A DNA stretch of 64,000 bases, taken from positions 20,832,001-20,896,000 of the forward strand of contig NC_043007.1 of assembly GCF_006345805.1 (NCBI RefSeq), written 5' to 3'. Source of the stretch: Octopus sinensis. Lineage: Eukaryota. Each line of letters opens with the position of its first letter. Position 1 is the first letter of the stretch. Positions 5,007 to 39,987 of this stretch are shown here, piece by piece. A program made the translations under genes and the position numbers. The notes under the pieces are model-generated. The model had not been told where the DNA came from. It was given only the letters and a program-made list of their open reading frames with translations, and ran no database searches.

Positions 5007-6647
5007 TTACCTGGTTACTTTTAAAATTGCATTTTTTTTCTTTGTGGTCCTTATTTTCATTGCTGTTTTAGTATCCCTTGTGGTCCTTATTTTCATTGCT
5101 GTTTTAGTATCCCGTTTAGTTCTCGGCTTTTGTTTCCCTTTCGGAAGGTCATTTTTTCTTGACTTTATTGCTTTTTGCTTGGTTTTCAAGAGATTGTATA
5201 ACTTTTTCTGAGTTACCAATGAATCTTTCTTGGCTTGGTTATATTCTAATTTCAGCTGGTTGCTTTCTTCTTTCTTTAAATGCAGTTTTAGCAGCTTCCA
5301 GCAATGATACACAACATCATCACACGGAAGACTGAACTCAAAGTTTCTTCTGTACAAGATTTGTTCATCAGGACTAAGTGTTGTCTCTATTGCCTCAAGT
5401 GCTAAAAGCACTTTCGATTTCGTTGGTGAATGTCGAGGTGTGATGACCTCAGAGTTACTTTGACCATTCAAAGATGAAGTTCCACTGCTTTGCAAAATTG
5501 ATGTAATCACAGAAGAAGAAAGAGGTTGTGGTGATGGCGACATTGATTCTTTGGAAGTGGATGCATTTTTTAATTCAAACGGATTAAAAGATGAAGCTTC
5601 CTCAAGTTCAGTCTCATTACTTATATTAGATACATTTAATACCAGAGAAGATGCTACCGGTTGAGAAGTTAATCTATGGTGCGTATCAGATAATGAAATT
5701 GAAGAAACATCTAAATCAGTGATAGATGTTGGTGAAATGTCGGTAGCCTCATGGTCAATATGTTGATTTAAGGGCCAGATACCCGCAAGTGCAAAGTTAC
5801 TTACAACGGATAATTCATTTAAAGCATTTATATGAGCTTTCTTGAAAACTCTAGCAAAAGTTATTTTATCAACAGAAACACCGTTAGTTCGGATCCATTC
5901 TTCACATGCTTGGAGCCACTTGGCTTTCAATGGTTCTGCATATATATTGGTCAATGGTTGTAGAATTTGATTGCAACGCGATGGCAAACAAAAAAGAATA
6001 ACATTGTTTACTTTGCACAAAGTGCTACAACAAATATCTTTATGCGATTTATGATCATCCAACAATAATACAACGTTGCCCCGATTTTCAAGGGTCGGGA
6101 GAGACGGAATGAAACAATCTTTCAGCCACGAGTAAAAGGTGTTTTGTGTCATCCCTCCACAATCTGAATGAATAGCTTTTGTACCAGCCGGGAGATCAAT
6201 CGTTATAGAAACACTGAAAGTCTTAGCAGGGTACACAACAAACGGCAAAAGGGTTCTTCCGTCAGCACATACAGCCATCAGTACAGTTATTTGTGAATAG
6301 CCTGGAGAAGTTAAACGATAGTCGTCTTTCATTAAGACGTCCGTTGCAAGTTTCCCAGTTTTTGAATGCAATGGAAAGCTAATCTCATCACAATAATAGA
6401 TTTGTTCTGACTGTGTAATGTCTTCTTCCAAAAGCATTTCTTGGAAGCGTTTCAACCAGTCACGCGTATGATTTTCTTTTGCGGTCATTGGTTTTTTATT
6501 GCCCTTCAATTTGTTGACCGAACCTATATTTAGATCTTGGTGTCTCGACATAAATCCATACAACCACGACTTTCCTGGTAAATTATCCATGAACATATCG
6601 ACTTTCCATTCACATTGATCCAGATATTGTTTGACACATTGACGGAT
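5007..6647 (-). CDS. pogo/Fot1-type transposase-derived gene, coding exon 3 (rest of HTH-CENPB, DDE_1 domain, S/T-rich linker, basic tail)
   Basis: Acceptor tttttctataatag|ATC extends the 529-aa ORF by IRQCVKQYLDQCEWKVD. Motifs PGKSWLYGFMSRH, YYCDEISF, VLLLDDHKSH and LQPLT...EPLK. The joined CDS is 1911 nt (636 aa). Confidence 0.9.
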   Translation of the reverse strand: MRQCVKQYLDQCEWKVDMFMDNLPGKSWLYGFMSRHQDLNIGSVNKLKGNKKPMTAKENHTRDWLKRFQEMLLEEDITQSEQIYYCDEISFPLHSKTGKLATDVLMKDDYRLTSPGYSQITVLMAVCADGRTLLPFVVYPAKTFSVSITIDLPAGTKAIHSDCGGMTQNTFYSWLKDCFIPSLPTLENRGNVVLLLDDHKSHKDICCSTLCKVNNVILFCLPSRCNQILQPLTNIYAEPLKAKWLQACEEWIRTNGVSVDKITFARVFKKAHINALNELSVVSNFALAGIWPLNQHIDHEATDISPTSITDLDVSSISLSDTHHRLTSQPVASSLVLNVSNISNETELEEASSFNPFELKNASTSKESMSPSPQPLSSSVITSILQSSGTSSLNGQSNSEVITPRHSPTKSKVLLALEAIETTLSPDEQILYRRNFEFSLPCDDVVYHCWKLLKLHLKKEESNQLKLEYNQAKKDSLVTQKKLYNLLKTKQKAIKSRKNDLPKGKQKPRTKRDTKTAMKIRTTRDTKTAMKIRTTKKKNAILKVTR

Positions 6648-7363
6648 CTATTATAGAAAAAGAAACAAATTTCAATTATTTTTCTATTTTCAATCAAGTA
6701 AAAATTAACCATTCTTAACAAATGTTATCTTTAAAAAAAAATTTAATTTTCTATAAAATAAGTATTGGACTTAAAAAACAAGTATTGAAGTCAATTTGTT
6801 TGATTAGATCCTTCAAGGCAGTGCCCCAGCTTGGCCGCAGTCCAATGATTGAAATAAGTAAAAGATAAAATATCATGAATAAATTTAAGATAAAGTGCAG
6901 GCATGGCTGTGTGGTTAAGCAGCTCATTTTGCAACCGCACAGTTTCAGGTTCAATACTACTGTGCAACACCTTGGGTAAGTGTCTTCAACTATAGCCCCA
7001 GGTCAACCAACGCCTTGTCAGTGAACCTGGGAGATAAGAACTGTGTGGAAGCCAATAATATACATACACGTACACACACACACACACACACACACACATA
7101 AACACACGCACATGGGGGAGTATCTTTATGTTTGTTTACCCACCACTCGACAACTGGTGTTGGTTTGTTTATGTCTCCATAGCTTAGCTAAAGACTGTCA
7201 GAATAAGTATCAAAAATAAAGAAAAAAACAAATACTGAAATCAATTTGTTTGATTAAAGCCTTTAAGGCAGTGCCCCAGCTTGGCAGCAGTCCAATGATT
7301 GAAATAAGTAAAAGATAAAAGATAAAATATCATGAATTAATTTAAGATAAATAGAAAACATAC

Positions 7364-7485
7364 CGCTTCCCCCGTTAACTTGAATCCACATTTTGACATA
7401 TCTTTGATCCAACACTTCAAACATTTCTCTTCGTCTTTTGTTAGTACAGGTTTTGGGCCTCTGACAGGCAAAGCTGATCTTTTTC
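7364..7485 (-). CDS. pogo/Fot1-type transposase-derived gene, coding exon 2 (start of HTH-CENPB/Tc5 domain)
   Basis: Acceptor tctctttag|GA and donor GCG|GTATGT. The 122 nt read (G)KRSALPVRGPKPVLTKDEEKCLKCWIKDMSKCGFKLTGEA. Phases 1 and 0 match the flanking exons. Confidence 0.85.
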
Positions 7486-8315
7486 CTAAAGAGAACATAA
7501 ATGTTGTCAGGGAAGAAATGCAAAAAAGATCTAAGAATTAAATTAAATTAAATTTGTTTGGGTTATTTCGTGACTAAGTGCAGGTGAGGATATGTGGTAG
7601 AAAGTAAAGAAATATTTTAATCAACCCAGCGGGAATCTTAAACATTTCATTATTTTGAATGCAAAATAAAGGTGGCGAGCTGGCAGAAACGTTAGCACGC
7701 CGGGCGAAATGCTTAGCAGTATTTAGTCTGCCACTACGTTCTGAGTTCAAATTCCGCCAAGGTCGACTTTGCCTTTCATCCTTTCGGGGTCGATTAAATA
7801 AGTACCAGTTACGCACTGGGGTCGATGTAATCGACTTAATCCGTTTGTCCTCTCTGTGTTTAGGTCCTTGTGGGTATTAAAGAAATAAGTATTTCGTCTG
7901 CTTTTACGTTCTGAGTTCAAATTCTGCCAAGGTCGACTTTGCCTTTCATTCTTTTCAGGGTAGGGTGGGGGTGGGGGGTTTAATAAAATAAGGACCAAGT
8001 TGAGTACTGCGGTTGATGTAATCCCTCCTCAAAAATTCCTGGCCTTGTGCCAAAATTTGAAACTGTGTTAAATTGGATCGACAAGTGGTGGTGAGCTGGC
8101 AGAATTGTTAGCATGTCGGACAAAATGCTTAGCAGCATCTCATCCGTCTTTACATACTGAGTTCAAATTCTGCCGAGGTCAACTTCACTTTTCGTCCTTT
8201 TGGGTTGATTGAGCACTGGGGTTGATGTAATAATAATAATAATAATAATAATAATGAAATTATTGTGTATAGTGCTCAGGTGCATTACAACGCATCAAAG
8301 GTGCATGTACAGTAC

Positions 8316-8690
8316 TTACTTGTACTTGTGACGGCGTTCACCCAGGGCGGGTTGAGCCAGCTTCTTCTCTGTTCCTAACGGCATCACGAACCATGGCTGC
8401 CCACGCTCGACGGTCCTGTGCAAGGTCACTGGAGATAGCAAGCCATTCACGGTTCCATCTGCGCAGGCCGACCACCTGCAGACCTGAGAGCTCAGAGAGG
8501 TCCTCCTTTATCGTCGTTGCCCAGGTCTTCAGCTGTTCACCCTTGCATTTGCGCCAGCTGGGAAGTGGAGGTGGGAGGAGATCATCGCGAATCAGCTCAC
8601 CCTCTGGACACCGGGCCGCATGACCGAACCACCTTAAGTGCCGTTGTAGAAGCACCGAAGGGAGAGGCCGGAGATTCAGGTGACGGCTTG
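8316..8690 (-). mobile_element. RTE-clade LINE 3' fragment inserted into a CR1 3' end
   Basis: LRWFGHAARCPEGELIRD...KTWATTIKEDL...AQDRRAWAAMVRDAV followed by a caagtacaagtaagta tail. tgtacagtac is present on both flanks (8306-8315 and 8689-8698). Confidence 0.85.
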
Positions 8691-8944
8691 TACAGTACAT
8701 AGGATTATGTAGAAAAGTCAGGAAAGTGAACAGTGTATGAGTCATGATATACATGTGTGCATGTGTATGGAGGGAACGGGTATCAGGTGTAGTGTTGGCA
8801 AATTTCAGGAATCATGAAGGTTTTAAAGAATTCAATAAACTTACTGCCTCCTCAAAACTTTCTGGCTTTGGACCAAAATTTGAAACTTACTATGAATGCA
8901 TCATGACAAAAAAAACAAATAGTTGGGGGATACAAAAAGTCATT

Positions 8945-9215
8945 TGAACAATAAAATAATATTTACATTATTTACCTTTGATGGATATTTGTCCTCATCT
9001 TGTTTGCTGTTAACACAACATTTCGGCTGATATACCCTCCAACCTTCTTCAGGTGTCTTGGGGGGGCTCTTAACCACTACGCCATATGCCCAGGTTCGAA
9101 ATTTCCCCAAGACATCTCTAACGAAGGCTGGAGGGTATATCAGCCGAAGCATTGTGTTAACAACAAACAAGATGAGGACAAATATCCATCATATGTAAAT
9201 AATGTACATAATTCT
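8945..9215. mobile_element. Inverted pair of Penelope pLTR-like repeats, second hammerhead-bearing family
   Basis: The minus copy (about 8945-9063) and plus copy (about 9075-9215) share cccaagacac-CTGANGA-aggctg...cagcc-GAAA-ygttgtgttaacaacaaacaagatgaggacaaatatcc. A third copy lies at about 56095-56210. Confidence 0.65.
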
Positions 9216-9718
9216 TCATCTCTTAAATATAGAATACTAAAATAATGTCGTAAATTTTAAAAATGCATCTTATATAGGTGCAGGAGTGGCTGTGTGGTAA
9301 GTAGCTTGCTAACCAACCAGATGGTTCCTGGTTCAGTCCCACTGCGTGGCGTCTTGGGCAAGTGTCTTCTGCAATAGCCCCAGGCCGACCAATGCCTTGT
9401 GAGTGGATTTGGTAGACGGAAACTGAAAGAAGCCTGTCGTATATATGTGTGTGTGTGTGTTTGTGTGTCTGTGATTGTGTGTCTGTGTTTGTCCCCCTAG
9501 CATTGCTTGACAACCGATGCTGGTGTGTTTATGTCCCTGTCACTTAGCAGTTCGGCAAAAGAGACCGATAGAATAAGTACTGGGTTTACAAAGAATAAGT
9601 CCCGGGGTTGATTTGCTCGACTAAAGGCGGTGCTCCAGCATGGCCGCAGTCAAATGACTGAAACTAGTAAAACAGTAAAGGAGAGTAATATATTGACAAG
9701 AAGTGAAACATCACCTAC

Positions 9719-9866
9719 CTGAAAGTCTATCGGCTAATGTTGATTTCGGTATGTTATAATGCAAGGATGCCTTCCTTAAAGTCATTCCAGCTTTGACTGC
9801 TGTTATAGCTGCTTTTATGGTCTCGTCAGTGTAGGATAACTTGCGTGTGATCCGACGTCCAGGCAT
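9719..9866 (-). CDS. pogo/Fot1-type transposase-derived gene, coding exon 1 (HTH-psq domain)
   Basis: ATG at 9866 with an in-frame TGA upstream. Encodes MPGRRITRKLSYTDETIKAAITAVKAGMTLRKASLHYNIPKSTLADRLS-G, a typical psq HTH, and ends at a phase-1 donor CAG|GTAGGT. An acceptor (ttttaattag) near 9900 implies a further 5'UTR exon. Confidence 0.85.
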
Positions 9867-12800
9867 ATTGAAGGAGTAAAATCAGCAGACAGACCAATTC
9901 TAATTAAAATAATTAATGAAAAATAATCACATCCAGTAATAATTCTGGGTGCAATAGGAAGCATATTTTTAAACATGCAACAGTGGGAATTGTAGATTAA
10001 AAGGGATTTCACTTTGTGGGTGAGGGTGGGTGGGTGGGTGATGGGTCATGAAGTTTGTTAACACTTATTATGACAGTTTATTATAGGCATAGGAATGGCT
10101 GTGTGGTAAGTAGTTTGCTTACCAATCACATGGTTCCAGGTTCAGTCCCACTGCGTAGCACCTTGAGCAAGTGTCTTCTACTATAGCCTCGGGCCAACCA
10201 AAGCCTTGTGAGTGGATTTGGTAGACGGAAACTGAAAGAAGCCTGTCATATATATGTATGTGTGTCTGTGTTTGTCCCCCCAACATTGCTTGACAACCGA
10301 TGCTGGTGTGTTTACGTCCCCGTAACTTAGTGATTCCGCAAAAGAGACCGATAGAATAAGTACTAGGCTTACAAAGAATAAGTCCTGGTGGGGTTGATTT
10401 GCTCAACTAAAGGCGGTACTCCAGAATGGCCACAGTCAAATGACTGAAACAAGTAAAAGTGTAACGAGTTTATTCAATAACTCCAGCAAGGACATCATTC
10501 TGAGCTCCCCGAAAAGGCTTTAAAATGAACTTTTTCTTAATTGGAGTCAACCTGCTTGAAATTTGAACGCTGGTTATGTATGCATTTCCTGATCAACTTT
10601 CTAGAAGTAACCACTTGAACCCAAAACCCTCTCAACAGCTCTCCTATAACAATCAATGCCAGCCCAACCTTCACAGTACTATGTCCATTAATGCAGGCAT
10701 CATCATCATCATCATCATCGTTGTCATCATTTAACATCCACTTTTCCATGCTTGCATGGGTCAGATGAAATTTGTTGAGGTGGATTTTCTATGATTGGAT
10801 GCCCTTCCTGTCACCAACCCTCTAATTAATGAACTTTTTCTTAATTGGAGTCAAAACCTGCTTGAAATAAAGTAATATTTTCCTATGGCCAGACATGTCT
10901 TCACAGAAGATTGGAAACAAAAGACACTGATATTACAATGGTGACACTCACTCACAACTGTCACACAATACCTAGACAAGGATGAAGCACACACACACAC
11001 ACACACACACATGTACACACGCACATACATTTATTGCTACTTATTTTAAAATGATGGAAAAATTAAGGTTTGAAAAGTTGTTTGTTTATGACCCCATAAC
11101 TTAGCAGTTTGGCAAAAGAAGCTAATAGAATAAGTACGAAACTTTAAGCTAAACTTTAAGGCTTTGCCTCAGCATGGCCAAAGTCCAATAACTAAAACAA
11201 ACAAAAGATGAAAAGAATAGTGTTTCTAGGTTTGAAAATAGCTTAGATCCTTCTCTCCTTTTTAAACCAGTTTTTAATGCACATGTTTACACAGTGAGAG
11301 TAAAGAGTTTGAAGAATTGATCATTTTATACTTTTGTTTCAGCTAGTCTTCTTAAAATATACATTTCAGCTCAACAAGACATTGATTTACTGTATCTCTA
11401 TTCCACTGGCTTACTGAGCACGTATTGATTTCCTTTCTTTTATTTCAGCAACATTTCCTGTTCACACTACATGCATAACTCAAAAAAGAATTAAAGACTA
11501 AAGCTTTTCTTTCACCTCTGACTTTCCAAATACATTTATATGCACCACACTACCTCTACAACACACGTTAACTTAATCCAGTTTTTAGGAATATTGTTAT
11601 TGAAAAATTGCTGCTTTTTCTCAGTGTGAATTACTGTTTCTTCAAACTTGTAGATTATATAAATTTGGGATTGTGTGTGTGTATTTGGCATCTTTTTCTA
11701 GCATGTGGCATTACTTGGTAGCTGCCCTTATAATTTTATAATTCTATTTATAAAACTATTGAAAAGGTTGCAAGACGCAACGAAAATTTTAGGAAAATAA
11801 AAATAAGAAAAAAGTGGAAATTTTACCGGTGAGTGTGTTATATTATAAGACACAAAAAGAAAATTACTCTCCCCAGACACAACAGAATATGCTTCAACAC
11901 ACGAACTCATAAAGAACCTTGCAAACCAAATCCAAAAACGAAATCTATTTAAAATCATATAATTTGTAAATACATAAAAAGATTAAACCAAATCCAAGGG
12001 GTATGTAGGTATGTACATATATGTATGTATATATGCGCATATATATATATATATATATGCGACAGGCTTTTTTCACATACATACATACGTTTACATAACA
12101 GCCTACTAACAACTCTACCTGTGTATCTATAAACTATGGGTAAGAGGGGACTCTATACTCCTTAAAACCCTGAATTCCCGAAACTAGGGCCCCTTTGTAT
12201 ATAAGAAGAACTGTAAAAAAAATTATGCTTTATCAAAACCTTTACTCACTAGCGTTAGCTAGAGTGTGTGTCGTCCAGGGCGGCCCTTCTGTTTGCCGCC
12301 CCCGGATCCCACGACCCCCCCCCCATACACACACACACACAAAAAAACGCATATTGTCTACAGCAGAGCCCAAAGTGGTGCACCTTTAGATTTACCGCCC
12401 GGGGCGGACCGCACTCCCCCCGCTATGCTAGTGCCTTTACTAAAAGAACTGATTTTAAAGTGGGAATTTCGTGAAAGAAGAATGTTGTTTATCGCGAATT
12501 TCTGGCCTGTACATTAAGGCGTTTTGGGCCGGTTTTCGGTGCCAAAATATATTGAAGTTACGAGTGGGAAATTAAAGTAAAAGACGCCAAACTATTATTT
12601 AATAATAATTGATATTGATTTTACTGTAAAAATGTTCTTTTTATTTAAATATTTATTTTGCCAAAGAAAATTGCAAACTGATAACTTAAGTTTCGATCAA
12701 TTTTCGCAACTCCATAAAAGTAATTAGTTGTTATGATAATTTTATATAGTAATTTATTATAATTTTATAGTAATTTATTATAATTTTATATAGTAACTAA

Positions 12801-20045: not shown

Positions 20046-20999
20046 ATGGAGCCATACCTACTTGCTATTTTAATTATCATAATAATTGCCTTGATTGTTA
20101 TATGTTTGTGTTTACTACGCTGCTACATAATTCGGCACAGAACATGTCCCAGTCGTGCTGACCTCACTGGTAAAATAGCAATTGTAACTGGAGCAAATAT
20201 TGGCCTTGGTAAGGAAACTGCATTGGAGCTGTCTCTAAGGGGAGCCAAAGTAATACTAGCCTGTCGCAATGAATTCAAAGGTAAAGAATGTGCTGCCGAA
20301 ATTCGTCGTCAATCTAACCAAGAGGTAGTATTTCATAAACTTGATTTAGCATCTCTGAAGTCTGTGCAAAAATTTTCTCAGACAATAATTGAGCAAGAAC
20401 CACGTATTGATATATTGGTAAATAATGCTGGAGTTTTTCGATGTCCTTATATGCAAACAGAAGATGGTTTTGAGATGCACATGGGAGTGAACTACCTGGG
20501 GCATTTCTTACTGACTAATCTTTTACTGGATCTACTTAAGAAATCTTCACCAAGTCGTGTTGTTTGTGTCGGGAGTTTCCTTTACGCTAGAGGAAACATC
20601 AACTTTAAGGATTTCAATTCTGAAAGAAGCTATGATCGAACCCTTGCTTATTGTAACAGTAAACTTGCTCTCAGCTTGTTCTGTCGAGAGCTTAGCAAAC
20701 ATCTAAGAGATACAAGTGTAAACGTGTACTGTGTCAATCCAGGAATTGTAAGAACAAATTTACTTCAACATTCCGTTCCCGTTTTCATTCGGTACATACA
20801 GCCTTTATTTCCAATGTTTTTAAATGCTAAAGAAGGAGCACAATCAATCATCAATTGTGCCATTTCAGAACAACTTGCTGAAGAAACTGGGTTCTATTAT
20901 TCTGGTTGTCGACGGAAAGAATGGCACGATAAAGCTTTGAATGAAGAAGTTGCCAAAAGACTCTGGGAGTTTAGTGAAAGACTAACTGGATTGTCCTAA
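20046..20999 (+). CDS. Retinol dehydrogenase 11/12/13-like short-chain dehydrogenase/reductase, single coding exon
   Basis: 317 aa with an N-terminal hydrophobic anchor, TGANIGLG (TGxxxGxG), LACRN (basic residue typical of NADP(H) preference), NNAG, catalytic YCNSK and the C-terminal A..LW..SE.L motif of the RDH11-14 group. Confidence 0.93.
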   Translation: MEPYLLAILIIIIIALIVICLCLLRCYIIRHRTCPSRADLTGKIAIVTGANIGLGKETALELSLRGAKVILACRNEFKGKECAAEIRRQSNQEVVFHKLDLASLKSVQKFSQTIIEQEPRIDILVNNAGVFRCPYMQTEDGFEMHMGVNYLGHFLLTNLLLDLLKKSSPSRVVCVGSFLYARGNINFKDFNSERSYDRTLAYCNSKLALSLFCRELSKHLRDTSVNVYCVNPGIVRTNLLQHSVPVFIRYIQPLFPMFLNAKEGAQSIINCAISEQLAEETGFYYSGCRRKEWHDKALNEEVAKRLWEFSERLTGLS

Positions 21000-25373: not shown

Positions 25374-25959
25374 CTCGATCTGTGGCTGTAATGGTAAAAG
25401 GTTTGATTCAAATATCAAACAATTAGCAATTCAAAATGTTTGTGTCAGAGATATAAACCGTGTTATTATGATGTTTACGGTGTCTTGAAATACGTCTCTT
25501 CTTTTAGATATGACCGTTTAACCCCCTACCTCTCTTGCTTTCCCTGTTTCGAAATTTCCTCAATTTCATCAATAAATATTGACATATTAAAATTTATATA
25601 CCGTTTCCATTTATGAATCACACCTCAAATTATATGTAAATGTTTACATTTGCTAAATGAAACTGCTAGGAAACTATATCAAAGGCTGTTGATTTCTATT
25701 GATTTAGAATCGGGGATTATATTTCTTGCTTAGAATTCGATATGCCGAGGAAATAATTTATCGAAGCTTCCAGCAGATTAAATAAATAAGTTGAATGAAA
25801 TTATCTCTTTATGTGCAACATCAGAAACTAAGGCGATGTTTTTATGAGTTCTGATAAATCTTGTTTTTTTTTTGTTTTTTTTTTGGTTTTTGGTTTTTCC
25901 CATCGCCAATCTCCGACTTCGCTTGTCTCTGCGGCCCCTTCCATCTGTCCTTCTGCAAC

Positions 25960-26300
25960 GGCACTTGCGCTGGTTTGGCCATGCAAATACCATGTAGGCG
26001 TCCGATGGGTGAACTGAGCCGTGATGTCCTTCTCCCAACTCCACTTCCCAACTGGCGGAAACGCGCGGGCGGACAGCTGAAGACCTGGGTTACGACGATC
26101 GAGGAGGACCTCCCCGTGCTCACGGGACCACAGGTGGTCGGCCTGCGTCGATGGAACCGTGACTGGCTCGCTATCTCCAAGGAACTGGCGCAGGACCGTC
26201 GTACGTAGGCAGCCATGGTTCGAGATGCCTCGAGGGTGGTAGAAGAAGCCGACTCAACCTGCCCAGGGTGAATGTCGCCACAAGTACATGTAAGTAAGTT
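25960..26300 (+). mobile_element. RTE-clade LINE 3' fragment, same family as 8316-8690
   Basis: GELSRDVLLPTPLPNWRKRAGGQLKTWVTTIEEDL...AQDRRT* with a caagtacatgtaagtaagt tail. Confidence 0.85.
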
Positions 26301-26358
26301 GTGTGAGGCCCTGGTCAAACCTTATCGGGCAAACTTTACAGTACGATGGCAATCATTA

Positions 26359-37828: not shown

Positions 37829-38149
37829 ATTCCCTTATGTATAAAGCTGAAGTTGTCTCTGTGTGTGTGTGTGTGGCAGGTTTGGTAGCCTTCAACTAAC
37901 ACTATCTCCTCCAAGACTCTGCGGCGCAAGTTGACCAAAATTTCTTTTTTTTTTTTGGAAATTTTTGCCCGCCGCACTAAAAAATTTCCCCCTGATTCAA
38001 CCTATTGATGGGATCCAGACAGTATCACTGCTCTAGCTCAGAACTTACCTGGGAGTAAATGGCAATTAAGAGATGACTCCATGTTCTCAAGGACTCCTGG
38101 ACTCTTAAACTGGAGCGTCACAACCGGATACAATTTTATGTCATGCCCA

Positions 38150-39184
38150 GAACATACATACATGCGTGCATGCATACATACATACATAGACACACATACA
38201 TACATGCATACATACATACATACACACATACATACATATATATATACATACATACACACACATACATACAGACACATACATACATACACACACACATACA
38301 TACATACATACACACACACATACATATATACACACACACATTCATACATACATACATACATACATACATACATACATACATACATACATACATACATGCG
38401 TACGTACGTAATACGTACATACATACGTACTTACATACATACACACACACATTCATACATACATACATACGTACGTACTTACATACATACACACATACAT
38501 ACATACACACACATTCATACATACATACATACGTGCGTACGTACGTAATACGTACATACATACGTACGTACTTACATACATACACACGTACATACACACA
38601 CACATTCATACATACATACATACGTACGTACGTACGTAATACGTACATACATACATACATACATACACACACAGATACATACATACATACATACATACAT
38701 ACATACATACATACATACATACATACATACACACACATTCATACATACATACATACATACGTACGTACGTATGTAATACGTACATACATACATACATACA
38801 TACATACATACACACACAGATACATACATACATACTTACATACATACATACATACATACGTACATACATACGTACGTACGTAATACGTACATACATACAT
38901 ACATACACACACAGATAGATAGATACATACATACATACATACATACATACATACACACACACATTCATACATACATACATACGTACGTACGTACGTAATA
39001 CGTACATACATACATACATACATACACACACAGATACATACATACATACATACATACACACACAGATACATACATACATACATACATACATACATACACA
39101 CACACATACATACATACATACATACGTACGTACGTATGTAATACGTACATACATACATACATACACACACAGATACATACATAC

Positions 39185-39215
<31 letters not shown>

Positions 39216-39320
39216 CGTACGTACGTAATACGTACATACATACATACACACACAGATACATACATACATACATACATACATACATACATACATACATACA
39301 TACATACATACATACATACA
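38150..39320. repeat. Compound (TACA)n microsatellite with recurrent TACGTACGTAATACG and CACACAGA variants
   Basis: About 1.17 kb. It accounts for all the MYVC/HTYI ORFs in the track. Confidence 0.95.
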
Positions 39321-39987
39321 ATATTTTTACTATCAACGAGGCTTTACAACTTTTTTTAGAAACCAACCCCCTCTTTACAGGAAGAGTCCAAATAATTAAA
39401 AACTTAAGAGAATCGTACATACTTGCATGTATGCGGGGGACTGCCATATCGATTCTAGCTACCTAATCCCATTTACGATATATTGAGCAACTTGAGACGA
39501 GTTTAGAAGATACTTGCCCAAGATACCGCGCAATGGTATCGTTCTTGTTTATGTATTTAATACAGGGTGTATAAATTATGTTCATTCGAAATAATTATAT
39601 GGCAAAGAAAAAAAAATATCGCAAGTAGGGGAGGTAATTCTGATCGCGTTTCGGTTTTATTATGACTTCATCATCGCCTGGTATAAACGTCACTGTACTT
39701 AACGAAATATGAAGAGAGATAGTGAAGGCGCATGGCTCACAGTCCTGAAGCAGTGAGTTCGATTCCCAGATCGGGCTGTGTGTGTTGTGTCCTTGAGCAA
39801 GACACTTTATTTCACGTTGCTCCAGTTCACTCAGCTGTAGAAATGTGTTGCGACGTTTCCATTGTATAACATCAGTGGTGTAGAGAAGAGAGACTGCTGG
39901 TCTTCCATAAACAACCTTGCCTCGCAGGGTAACTTTCTAGACGCACTCCCAGAGTCATTCATGACCGAAGGCGGGGGGGGGGGGTCT

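What the first reader, a model, noticed from the sequence alone, without database searches (positions are those of the whole stretch)
5007..9866. Intron-containing, intact pogo/Fot1-type transposase gene: candidate domesticated cephalopod DNA-binding protein
Seen: three exons join in phase (148+122+1641 nt) into a 636-aa HTH-psq / HTH-CENPB / DDE_1 protein. Both introns are GT-AG, split the DNA-binding region and have accumulated SINEs and Penelope-type repeats, while the CDS stayed open. An acceptor near 9900 implies a further 5'UTR exon. I found no TIRs. Established: pogo transposases were repeatedly domesticated (CENP-B, JRK, TIGD, POGZ, fission yeast Abp1/Cbh). Inference: this is an old host gene, possibly an independent cephalopod or mollusc domestication.
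Basis: partly seen in the sequence, partly recalled or inferred. Interest (0 to 1): 0.8.

Follow-up and report, generated by a model that had tools for sequence, protein, structure and literature searches.

The report
Domesticated pogo transposase gene in Octopus
This is a single-copy, intron-bearing Octopus gene descended from a pogo "jumping gene" enzyme. It is kept by selection but has lost a catalytic residue, and its ortholog is already listed in a published catalogue, so it is a real but fairly ordinary case of transposase domestication.

Summary
Minus-strand exons 9866-9719, 7485-7364 and 6647-5007 join in phase through GT-AG introns. The 636-aa product is identical to RefSeq LOC115217325 isoform X1 (Octopus sinensis) and carries HTH_psq, HTH_Tnp_Tc5 and DDE_1.

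The gene is single copy in the 2.72-Gb genome; the next best hit is 26-28% identical. It has no TIRs. It lies between the same neighbours in O. bimaculoides, and O. vulgaris carries the same three-exon gene; intron positions match in all three species.

Between O. sinensis and O. bimaculoides dN/dS is 0.20 (p about 2e-16). Both CDS indels are multiples of three.

The third catalytic Asp is Thr (D177/D287/T323, "DD35T") in O. sinensis and O. bimaculoides; it is Asp in 107 of 122 relatives. The nearest relatives (30-36% identity) are intronless DDD elements with TA-flanked TIRs, often with a C-terminal PHD finger that Octopus lacks. Catalytically dead gastropod homologues are a separate lineage (AU test).

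Domestication is therefore well supported, but only within the genus Octopus. The "Penelope" repeat is a LINE-like RT tail.

It is not new: Mukherjee & Moroz 2023 list the O. bimaculoides ortholog as a transposon-derived HTH-Psq factor. Function is inferred (DNA binding) and untested.

The parts
9719..9866 (-). Coding exon 1 (ATG at 9866-9864; residues 1-49 plus the first base of codon 50; most of HTH_psq)
   Evidence: It matches the RefSeq protein exactly and is 100% identical in O. vulgaris.
7486..9718 (-). Intron 1 (2233 nt, GT-AG, phase 1), filled with interspersed repeats. The O. bimaculoides intron at the same position is only 1193 nt.
7364..7485 (-). Coding exon 2 (residues 50-90; end of HTH_psq and start of HTH_Tnp_Tc5)
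6648..7363 (-). Intron 2 (716 nt, GT-AG, phase 0). Positions 7-611 are short interspersed repeats, and an internal segment is duplicated in O. sinensis.
5007..6647 (-). Coding exon 3 (residues 91-636 plus TAA). It encodes the rest of HTH_Tnp_Tc5, the DDE_1/RNase H-like core, a disordered Ser-rich linker, a helical C-terminal module and a basic tail.
6387..6389 (-). Codon of D177, the first catalytic Asp (retained). The neighbouring conserved Asn is Tyr (N175Y).
6057..6059 (-). Codon of D287, the second catalytic Asp (retained)
5949..5951 (-). Codon of T323, which occupies the third catalytic Asp position, 35 residues after D287. It is Thr in O. sinensis and O. bimaculoides and Asp in 107 of 122 relatives.
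5865..6293 (-). Pfam DDE_1 match (residues 209-351); omega 0.13 against O. bimaculoides
5283..5411 (-). Conserved C-terminal helical motif (residues 503-545, LLALEAIE...ILYRRNFE...DDVVYHCWKLLK). It is shared with transposon relatives from tunicate, crinoid and gastropod.
   Evidence: (block pLDDT 80-88).
5042..5113 (-). Perfect 2 x 36-nt tandem duplication in the basic tail. It adds 12 residues, is absent from O. bimaculoides, and is missing from the 624-aa RefSeq isoform.
9867..9945 (-). Conserved leader upstream of the ATG, with a candidate 3' splice acceptor (AG at 9901-9900) preceded by a T-rich tract. A possible boundary of an unverified 5'UTR exon.
8338..8811 (-). Open frame inside intron 1. 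It is the 3' tail of an abundant RVT_1-bearing, LINE-like retrotransposon and is not part of the gene. It lies in the 9284-7672 stretch that has no aligned counterpart in the O. bimaculoides intron.
8942..9228 (.). 111-nt inverted-repeat foldback (84% complementary) in intron 1; MITE-like
   Evidence: only a sub-threshold miRNA-family hit.
20046..20999 (+). Divergently oriented, intronless adh_short gene (317 aa). This is the conserved upstream neighbour used as a synteny anchor.

Best explanation
The locus is an immobilised pogo-superfamily transposase gene that the host maintains. Its Fot-like architecture is HTH_psq + HTH_Tnp_Tc5 + DDE_1 with DD35 spacing.

Shown:
- It is a single-copy, three-exon gene.
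- It lies at an orthologous position between the same neighbours in O. sinensis and O. bimaculoides, and O. vulgaris has the same three-exon gene.
- It has no terminal inverted repeats.
- It evolves under purifying selection over its whole length.
- It carries Thr in place of the third catalytic Asp, plus further substitutions around the active site.

Inferred mechanism:
- The protein no longer cuts and pastes DNA.
- It acts as a nuclear, sequence-specific DNA-binding or chromatin protein. The paired N-terminal helix-turn-helix domains would do the binding.
- The RNase H-like core and the conserved C-terminal helical module would be kept as structural or oligomerisation and partner-binding surfaces. 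The basic tail would serve as a nuclear-localisation or DNA-contact segment.

Inferred history:
- A TA-flanked, intronless, PHD-finger-bearing element of a marine-invertebrate pogo clade inserted between the adh_short gene and its neighbour.
- It then lost its TIRs and PHD finger and gained two spliceosomal introns in the DNA-binding region.
- It was fixed before the O. sinensis / O. bimaculoides split.
For: - Exact match to RefSeq isoform X1.
- Pfam domains above curated cut-offs.
- Single copy. The whole-genome six-frame search gives only this locus at high identity, and the next hit is 26-28% identical.
- Orthology. O. bimaculoides has the same exon phases and intron positions, the same adh_short and downstream neighbours, and colinear blastn blocks across 24 kb. 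O. vulgaris has the same three exons.
- Selection against O. bimaculoides. NG86 dN 0.040, dS 0.197, omega 0.20, ranging 0.12-0.45 across regions. The binomial test on 57 non-synonymous versus 70 synonymous changes gives p = 1.9e-16. CDS p-distance is 0.065 against 0.091 for noncoding DNA. Differences by codon position are 28/27/67. Noncoding DNA has 8.1 indel events per kb, 21 of 23 not multiples of three, whereas the CDS has two indels of 3 and 36 nt. The simulated probability of no stop codon after 122 random substitutions is 0.0008.
- Selection against O. vulgaris. CDS divergence is 0.31% against 1.26% for pooled intron and flank DNA.
- Catalytic site. The columns are D/D/T. The third is Asp in 107 of 122 relatives and Thr only in Octopus. 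N175Y, P281N and F327A/V also depart from consensus residues held by at least 85% of relatives, yet 31 of 37 highly conserved core positions are kept.
- Structure. The AF2 model shows two HTH bundles, an RNase H-like core (148-378), a disordered stretch (388-499) and a confident helical C-terminus. The Foldseek top hits are Mos1, Sleeping Beauty and the SETMAR transposase domain.
- Relatives. The sister sequences P0006 and P0007 are intronless, DDD, flanked by TA plus 30-nt TIRs, and PHD-bearing.
- Literature. Omega is in the range reported for vertebrate domesticated pogo genes, 0.06-0.21 (PMC7386202).
Against: - No direct expression or splicing evidence was accessible. DNA binding, nuclear localisation and loss of catalysis are all inferred.
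- Orthologs were shown only within one genus. The O. sinensis / O. vulgaris comparison has just 6 substitutions (4 non-synonymous, 2 synonymous) and says nothing about omega by itself.
- dS (0.197) is about twice the noncoding JC distance (0.097). Measured against noncoding divergence, omega is nearer 0.4.
- Low Ka/Ks alone is also expected for an active transposase. The argument therefore rests on the combination with single-copy synteny, missing TIRs and the DDT site.
- Two of the three catalytic carboxylates remain, so residual nuclease activity is not excluded.
- The AF2 model is of moderate quality (mean pLDDT 65, 8-sequence alignment).
Confidence: 0.8

Rival explanations
1. It is simply a low-copy transposon copy, active or recently dead, whose ORF is still open by chance or because the transposase is selected for transposition.
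For: The domain set is that of a full-length pogo transposase. Low Ka/Ks can also reflect selection for transposition, a caveat noted in PMC10027918. The genome holds other pogo-like ORFs.
Against: - There is a single copy at the same syntenic site in O. sinensis and O. bimaculoides, and O. vulgaris has the same gene.
- There are no TIRs.
- Two spliceosomal introns lie at identical positions in all three species, whereas the four relatives whose loci were fetched have none inside the transposase region.
- The third catalytic Asp is lost.
- The simulated probability of an ORF staying open after neutral substitutions alone is 0.0008, and only in-frame indels are seen.
Confidence: 0.03
2. The protein keeps a DNA-cleaving or nicking activity, using D177, D287 and a substitute ligand. 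It would then work as a host nuclease or recombinase rather than as a passive DNA binder, comparable to the residual activities of DDN SETMAR.
For: Two catalytic Asp residues and 31 of 37 highly conserved core positions are retained. The DDE_1 region is the most constrained part, with omega 0.13. The predicted core has the fold of the Mos1 and SETMAR catalytic domains.
Against: - Thr cannot supply the third carboxylate.
- Several other conserved residues next to the active site are replaced: N175Y, T316N, H317Q and F327A/V.
- No TIR substrate exists at the locus. A search for a TIR like that of the closest relative found nothing in the genome.
- By established knowledge, catalytic-core constraint is also seen in inactive CENP-B and TIGD proteins.
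Confidence: 0.1
3. It belongs to an ancient molluscan domestication shared with the catalytically dead gastropod homologues: Aplysia LOC101853723 (GAN) and Biomphalaria LOC106063552 (DDN).
For: Gastropod proteins are among the best database hits and have also lost the third Asp. The C-terminal helical motif is shared.
Against: - The gastropod proteins fall in a different, well-supported clade interleaved with DDD elements.
- Forcing Octopus and gastropods together costs 169 lnL units (p-AU 8e-70). The group was defined after the tree had been seen.
- The Biomphalaria gene is intronless and lies close to a second copy inside another gene's span.
- The Aplysia transposase part is one exon fused to two unrelated upstream exons.
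- The substituted residues differ: Thr against Asn.
Confidence: 0.03
4. It is a transcribed but functionless relic, and the Gnomon model merely threads an ORF through repeats.
For: NCBI names it 'uncharacterized'. No functional data exist. The isoform lacking 12 aa may reflect an assembly or polymorphism issue.
Against: The same evidence of constraint as above. Three independent annotations agree on the exons.
Confidence: 0.04

Closest known systems
Vertebrate pogo-derived genes POGK / POGZ (Passer-derived; DN35D / DD35D) and TIGD, JRK, CENP-B (Tigger- or pogoR-derived)
   Same: They are immobilised single-copy pogo transposase genes that keep the HTH DNA-binding region and the DDE_1 core. Ka/Ks is well below 1 (0.06-0.21 in PMC7386202, against 0.20 here). 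The catalytic triads are often degenerate, and the 35-residue spacing matches POGK and POGZ.
   Different: The origin is independent and they are not orthologous. The Octopus protein has HTH_psq rather than CENP-B_N or BrkDBD. It has no KRAB or zinc-finger fusion. Its substitution is at the third position (D to T). Two introns were gained inside the DNA-binding domain. It is known only from the genus Octopus.
Octopus 'HTH-Psq' transposon-derived transcription factors catalogued by Mukherjee & Moroz 2023 (PMC10027918)
   Same: It is the same gene. The O. bimaculoides ortholog XP_014778256 / LOC106874873 is one of the listed entries.
   Different: The catalogue classifies by domain content and by family-level Ka/Ks. 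It gives no per-gene synteny, orthology, catalytic-site, intron or parent-element analysis.
TLEWI, the intron-bearing, TIR-less, low-copy Tc1-like genes of pteriomorph bivalves (bioRxiv 10.1101/656579)
   Same: It is a molluscan IS630-Tc1-mariner-group transposase gene with spliceosomal introns, no TIRs and low copy number, proposed as co-opted.
   Different: It belongs to a different superfamily (Tc1-like DD36E against pogo DD35D), a different host class, and keeps its catalytic signature, whereas the Octopus gene is DDT.
TIR-flanked, PHD-finger-bearing pogo elements P0006 / P0007 (loci L024, L025) and their relatives in tunicate, crinoid, urchin and bivalve
   Same: These are the closest sequences outside Octopus, at 30-36% identity. 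They have the same HTH_psq / Tc5 / DDE_1 order, the same DD35 spacing and the same C-terminal helical motif.
   Different: They are intronless and DDD-intact, with TA plus 30-nt TIRs and a C-terminal PHD finger. The Octopus gene has none of these features and sits on a stem of about 1.0 substitutions per site.

Membership tests
pogo superfamily transposase (functional element) | N-terminal paired HTH DNA-binding region plus a Pfam DDE_1 catalytic core | tested here: met
   HTH_psq, HTH_Tnp_Tc5 and DDE_1 all score above the gathering cut-offs. The predicted fold matches the Mos1, SB and SETMAR cores.
pogo superfamily transposase (functional element) | Intact DDD catalytic triad | tested here: not met
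   The residues are D177 / D287 / T323. The third column is Asp in 107 of 122 relatives and Thr only in Octopus.
pogo superfamily transposase (functional element) | Terminal inverted repeats with a TA target-site duplication | tested here: not met
   There are no flanking inverted repeats beyond (CA)n tracts and chance 11-mers. The relatives L024 and L025 do have TA plus 30-nt TIRs.
pogo superfamily transposase (functional element) | Multiple dispersed copies in the genome | tested here: not met
   There is only one locus. The next hit is 26-28% identical and falls outside the gene's clade.
Fot / Fot-like family of pogo (as defined by Gao et al. 2020) | DNA-binding region of HTH_psq and/or HTH_Tnp_Tc5, with no CENP-B_N, BrkDBD or HTH_ABP1_N | tested here: met
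   [quoted passage not shown] The criterion comes from PMC7386202.
Fot / Fot-like family of pogo (as defined by Gao et al. 2020) | 35-residue spacing between the second and third catalytic positions (DD35D) | tested here: met
   D287 to position 323 leaves 35 intervening residues. Passer elements share this spacing, so it is not diagnostic on its own.
Fot / Fot-like family of pogo (as defined by Gao et al. 2020) | Phylogenetic placement with named Fot1 or Fot-like reference transposases | not tested
   No named reference sequences were available in the tools. Gao et al. report Fot-like elements outside animals only. Dupeyron et al. report oyster Fot1-like and basal DD35D invertebrate groups.
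Domesticated (co-opted) transposase gene | Single-copy orthologs at a syntenic position in several species | tested here: met
   Synteny was tested in O. sinensis and O. bimaculoides: same neighbours and colinear flanks. O. vulgaris has an ortholog with the same three exons. Deeper taxa could not be tested.
Domesticated (co-opted) transposase gene | Purifying selection on the coding sequence (dN/dS < 1; frame preserved while neutral DNA decays) | tested here: met
   Omega is 0.20, p = 1.9e-16. Only in-frame indels occur. The CDS is less diverged than noncoding DNA.
Domesticated (co-opted) transposase gene | Loss of the hallmarks of mobility (TIRs, catalytic triad) | tested here: met
Domesticated (co-opted) transposase gene | Expression and a demonstrated host function | not testable with these tools
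   No RNA-seq or functional data could be reached. The only indirect evidence is the set of RefSeq and ENA gene models and isoforms.
CENP-B / TIGD / JRK group | CENP-B_N-type first HTH and descent from pogoR or Tigger transposases | tested here: not met
   There is no CENP-B_N match at E <= 0.1. phmmer against PDB chains finds nothing at E <= 1. The spacing is 35, not about 30. The origins follow PMC7386202.

The most novel reading that the evidence does not exclude
The gene would be an Octopus-lineage-specific regulator captured from a pogo clade that may not yet have been described: a PHD-finger-bearing, DD35D clade of marine invertebrates. After capture it lost the chromatin-reading PHD finger and its catalytic Asp, and gained two introns de novo inside its DNA-binding domain. 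It would now bind decayed remnants of its extinct parent element, or other lineage-specific sites, and so wire an octopod-specific regulatory network.
Probability: 0.15. Interest if true: 0.55.

Novelty: already known. Interest (0 to 1): 0.27.

Why it matters
Recurrent co-option of pogo transposases into DNA-binding proteins is well established (CENP-B, TIGD, JRK, POGK, POGZ, Abp1/Cbh). Cephalopod examples have been catalogued, this gene's ortholog among them.

The value here is a clean per-gene case. It has a datable lower bound (before the O. sinensis / O. bimaculoides split), a degenerate DDT active site and post-capture intron gain. It has also lost the PHD finger that many of its mobile relatives carry.

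If the protein proved to have lineage-specific targets, it would be a tractable example of how transposases feed cephalopod regulatory novelty. As it stands it is a solid but unsurprising member of a known phenomenon.

Tried and rejected
- Profile search of the 5.8-billion-protein set with a 20-sequence alignment, to name more relatives. It returned only the two Octopus proteins, probably because low-complexity words dominated the prefilter.
- Whole-genome search of O. sinensis with the closest mobile relative (P0007), to look for the parent family. The server failed or was busy five times. The absence of the parent clade therefore rests plus the tree.
- Search of the genome for a TIR like that of relative L025, allowing up to 3 mismatches. 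No hits; uninformative, as expected for fast-evolving TIRs.
- tRNA-head test of the intronic 'SINEs' with ARAGORN and Rfam. Nothing was found, so they are described only as short interspersed repeats.
- phmmer against PDB sequences: no hit at E <= 1.
- Shared-intron test for an ancient molluscan origin. Rejected: Biomphalaria is intronless, and the Aplysia transposase part is a single exon.
- O. sinensis versus O. vulgaris dN/dS. There are too few substitutions (6) to be informative.
- Named Fot, Tigger and Passer reference sequences for a family-level tree. They could not be recovered from the held supplements.
- The idea that the introns arose from SINE insertion. Both introns carry an interspersed repeat within a few tens of nt of the donor site. 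With more than 10,000 first-look candidate matches in the genome this may well be coincidence, so it was not pursued.

Full report
**Where the window is.** The window is G000:C11:20832001-20896000 of a 2.72-Gb, 13,516-contig assembly. NCBI's name for the encoded protein places it in Octopus sinensis.

**Observation.**
- On the minus strand, 9866-9719 (148 nt), 7485-7364 (122 nt) and 6647-5007 (1641 nt) join into a 1911-nt frame with a single terminal TAA.
- Both introns are GT-AG, with good donor and acceptor contexts.
- The 636-aa product is letter-for-letter the RefSeq model LOC115217325 isoform X1.
- Pfam gives HTH_psq at 13-53, HTH_Tnp_Tc5 at 66-130 and DDE_1 at 209-351, all above curated cut-offs.
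- Intron 1 (phase 1, in codon G50) splits the psq domain. Intron 2 (phase 0, A90|I91) splits the Tc5 domain.

**Copy number and mobility hallmarks.**
- A six-frame search of the whole genome finds the three exons of this locus. After that, nothing is better than 26-28% identity.
- The best of those other pogo-like ORFs fall outside the gene's clade in a tree.
- No inverted repeats flank the gene. The hits are (CA)n tracts, an intronic foldback and three chance 11-mers.

**Orthology.**
- O. bimaculoides LOC106874873 is 623 aa and 89-91% identical. It lies in a locus with the same divergent adh_short gene upstream and the same large gene downstream.
- Blastn blocks are colinear over about 24 kb. 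Its exons are 148 and 122 nt plus a terminal exon, with identical intron positions and phases.
- O. vulgaris CAI9730615 differs at four residues and has the same three exons. Its neighbours were not examined.
- Intron 1 is 2233 nt in O. sinensis but 1193 nt in O. bimaculoides. Repeats have therefore continued to enter or leave the introns while the frame stayed intact.

**Selection against O. bimaculoides.**
- Nei-Gojobori dN = 0.040, dS = 0.197, omega = 0.20.
- By region, omega is 0.12 in the HTH region, 0.13 in DDE_1 and 0.14-0.45 in the tail.
- There are 57 non-synonymous and 70 synonymous changes, against a neutral expectation of 78% non-synonymous. The binomial test gives p = 1.9e-16.
- Differences by codon position are 28/27/67.
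- CDS p-distance is 0.065, against 0.091 in 2.8 kb of aligned intron and flank.
- Noncoding DNA carries 8.1 indel events per kb, 21 of 23 not multiples of three. The CDS carries two, of 3 nt and 36 nt.
- Random placement of the observed number of substitutions leaves the frame open in only 0.08% of simulations.
- Caveat: dS is about twice the noncoding distance, so omega relative to noncoding DNA is nearer 0.4.

**Selection against O. vulgaris.** Only 6 CDS differences exist (4 non-synonymous, 2 synonymous). That is uninformative for omega, but the CDS is about four-fold less diverged than the surrounding DNA.

**Catalytic site.**
- In a 122-sequence core alignment the three catalytic columns read D177, D287 and T323.
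- The third column is Asp in 107 sequences, Asn in 11, and Thr only in the two Octopus proteins included. O. vulgaris does not differ at this residue.
- Nearby conserved residues are also replaced: N175Y, P281N, T316N, H317Q and F327A/V.
- Even so, 31 of 37 positions conserved in at least 85% of relatives are retained.
- The spacing is 35 residues.

**Predicted structure.**
- An AlphaFold2 model was built from an 8-sequence alignment (mean pLDDT 65).
- It shows two helical HTH bundles, an RNase H-like alpha/beta core (148-378) and a disordered Ser-rich stretch (388-499).
- It also shows a confident helical C-terminal module at 502-588, followed by a basic helix.
- Foldseek's best PDB matches are the Mos1, Sleeping Beauty and SETMAR transposase domains.

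**Relatives and origin.**
- An exhaustive HMMER search of 1.84 billion representatives gives 10,612 hits. Outside Octopus, nothing exceeds about 36% identity.
- The named top hits are scattered: Biomphalaria, Styela, a crinoid, an urchin, Aplysia, a sea star, Mercenaria and a nemertean. That is a transposon-like distribution.
- In ML trees the Octopus pair sits on a stem of about 1.0 substitutions per site, within a clade (SH-aLRT 99) that holds P0006 and P0007.
- P0006 and P0007 are intronless ORFs with DDD triads, flanked by TA plus 30-nt TIRs. Pfam confirms a C-terminal PHD finger in P0007 and in the Styela protein.
- A PHD-like Cys4-His-Cys3 terminus is present in 29 of the 149 top relatives.
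- The Octopus protein ends before that finger. It does keep the family's C-terminal helical motif at residues 503-545.

**Gastropod homologues.**
- The catalytically dead gastropod proteins (Biomphalaria DDN, Aplysia GAN) belong to another clade.
- Constraining them with Octopus is rejected, with delta-lnL 169 and p-AU 8e-70. The group was chosen after the tree had been seen.
- They share no introns with the Octopus gene.

**Family label.** By the criteria of Gao et al. 2020, the domain pair HTH_psq + HTH_Tnp_Tc5 and the DD35 spacing fit Fot / Fot-like. Placement against named references was not tested. Dupeyron et al. 2020 report oyster Fot1-like and basal invertebrate DD35D groups.

**Introns and the leader.**
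- Intron 2 is mostly short interspersed repeats, with 10,578 first-look candidates in the genome.
- The 157-aa frame at 8338-8811 in intron 1 is the tail of an abundant RVT_1-bearing, LINE-like element. Nothing shows it to be Penelope-type.
- No tRNA-like head was detected in the short repeats.
- The 79 nt upstream of the ATG, including the AG at 9901-9900 and its T-rich tract, are nearly identical in O. bimaculoides.
- NCBI lists four accessions with the same X1 protein. Both facts fit an upstream non-coding exon, which remains unverified.
- A perfect 2 x 36-nt tandem duplication (5042-5113) adds 12 residues to the basic tail in O. sinensis and O. vulgaris. It is missing from O. bimaculoides and from the 624-aa RefSeq isoform.

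**Prior knowledge.**
- Supplementary file 5 of Mukherjee & Moroz 2023 (PMC10027918) lists XP_014778256 / LOC106874873 under 'HTH-PSQ' among transposon-derived transcription factors of O. bimaculoides. The paper argues for independent Octopus domestications of pogo-derived factors.
- Its evidence is domain content and family-level Ka/Ks, without per-gene synteny or active-site analysis.
- A full-text search for the LOC and XP identifiers finds no paper that discusses the gene in its main text.

**Verdict.**
- The interpretation (a host-maintained, domesticated pogo transposase, independent of other molluscan cases) is supported. Its depth is established only for the genus Octopus.
- The mechanism is inferred from architecture and by analogy with CENP-B, TIGD and POGK: sequence-specific DNA binding by the HTH pair, with an inactive RNase H-like scaffold.
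- The case is a well-documented instance of a known phenomenon, already catalogued in the literature, and is of modest interest.

Noticed in passing
L025:322-4120 and L024:1835-7706 (relatives); P0005, P0007, P0020, P0044, P0057 and others: The closest mobile relatives form a pogo clade (HTH_psq + Tc5 + DDE_1, DD35D, TA + 30-nt TIRs beginning GAGT). Their transposases end in a PHD finger: Pfam PF00628 in P0007 and the Styela protein, and a Cys4-His-Cys3 terminus in 29 of 149 top hits. A full-text search found no paper linking pogo transposases with a PHD finger.
   Followed up: partly
L022:6001-9453 and L022:503-2797 (Biomphalaria glabrata): The best non-Octopus hit is an intronless 1150-aa ORF made of two tandem transposase units, both DDN. 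A third DDE_1 ORF lies 3 kb upstream, and all sit inside the span of an ERGIC/ERV-family gene.
   Followed up: no
L023:6001-12431 (Aplysia californica LOC101853723): This transposase-derived protein has lost all three catalytic residues (G/A/N). It is encoded in one exon fused to two upstream exons that add a 93-residue N-terminal extension. It looks like a separate host-transposase fusion.
   Followed up: partly
window 8942-9052 / 9118-9228: A 111-nt inverted-repeat foldback (84% complementary) lies inside intron 1. It gives only a far sub-threshold Rfam miRNA-family hit (36.7 bits against a gathering score of 230). It looks like a MITE or palindromic repeat.
   Followed up: no
window 7345-7260 and 6890-6800; window 9690-9600: Both introns carry similar short interspersed repeat sequence, in the same orientation, within a few tens of nt of the 5' splice site. 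Intron 2 also holds an internal duplication of its first ~90 nt in O. sinensis only. Exon 1 ends CTTTCAG|G and intron 1 ends CTCTTTAG|G, a weak direct repeat. Whether repeat insertion had any role in intron origin was not tested.
   Followed up: no
window 38000-39500: A roughly 1.5-kb low-complexity tandem array, seen only as repetitive six-frame translations (YIHTYIHT... on one strand, CMYVCMYV... on the other), creates long spurious ORFs on both strands.
   Followed up: no
window 25842-26321: Its translation resembles the reverse-strand reading of the tail in intron 1, so it looks like another copy of the same LINE-like 3' tail; similarity was judged from the translation only.
   Followed up: no
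window 20046-20999 (+): An intronless 317-aa short-chain dehydrogenase (adh_short) gene with an N-terminal transmembrane-like segment. It is divergent from the pogo-derived gene and 92% identical at the DNA level to its O. bimaculoides ortholog.
   Followed up: partly
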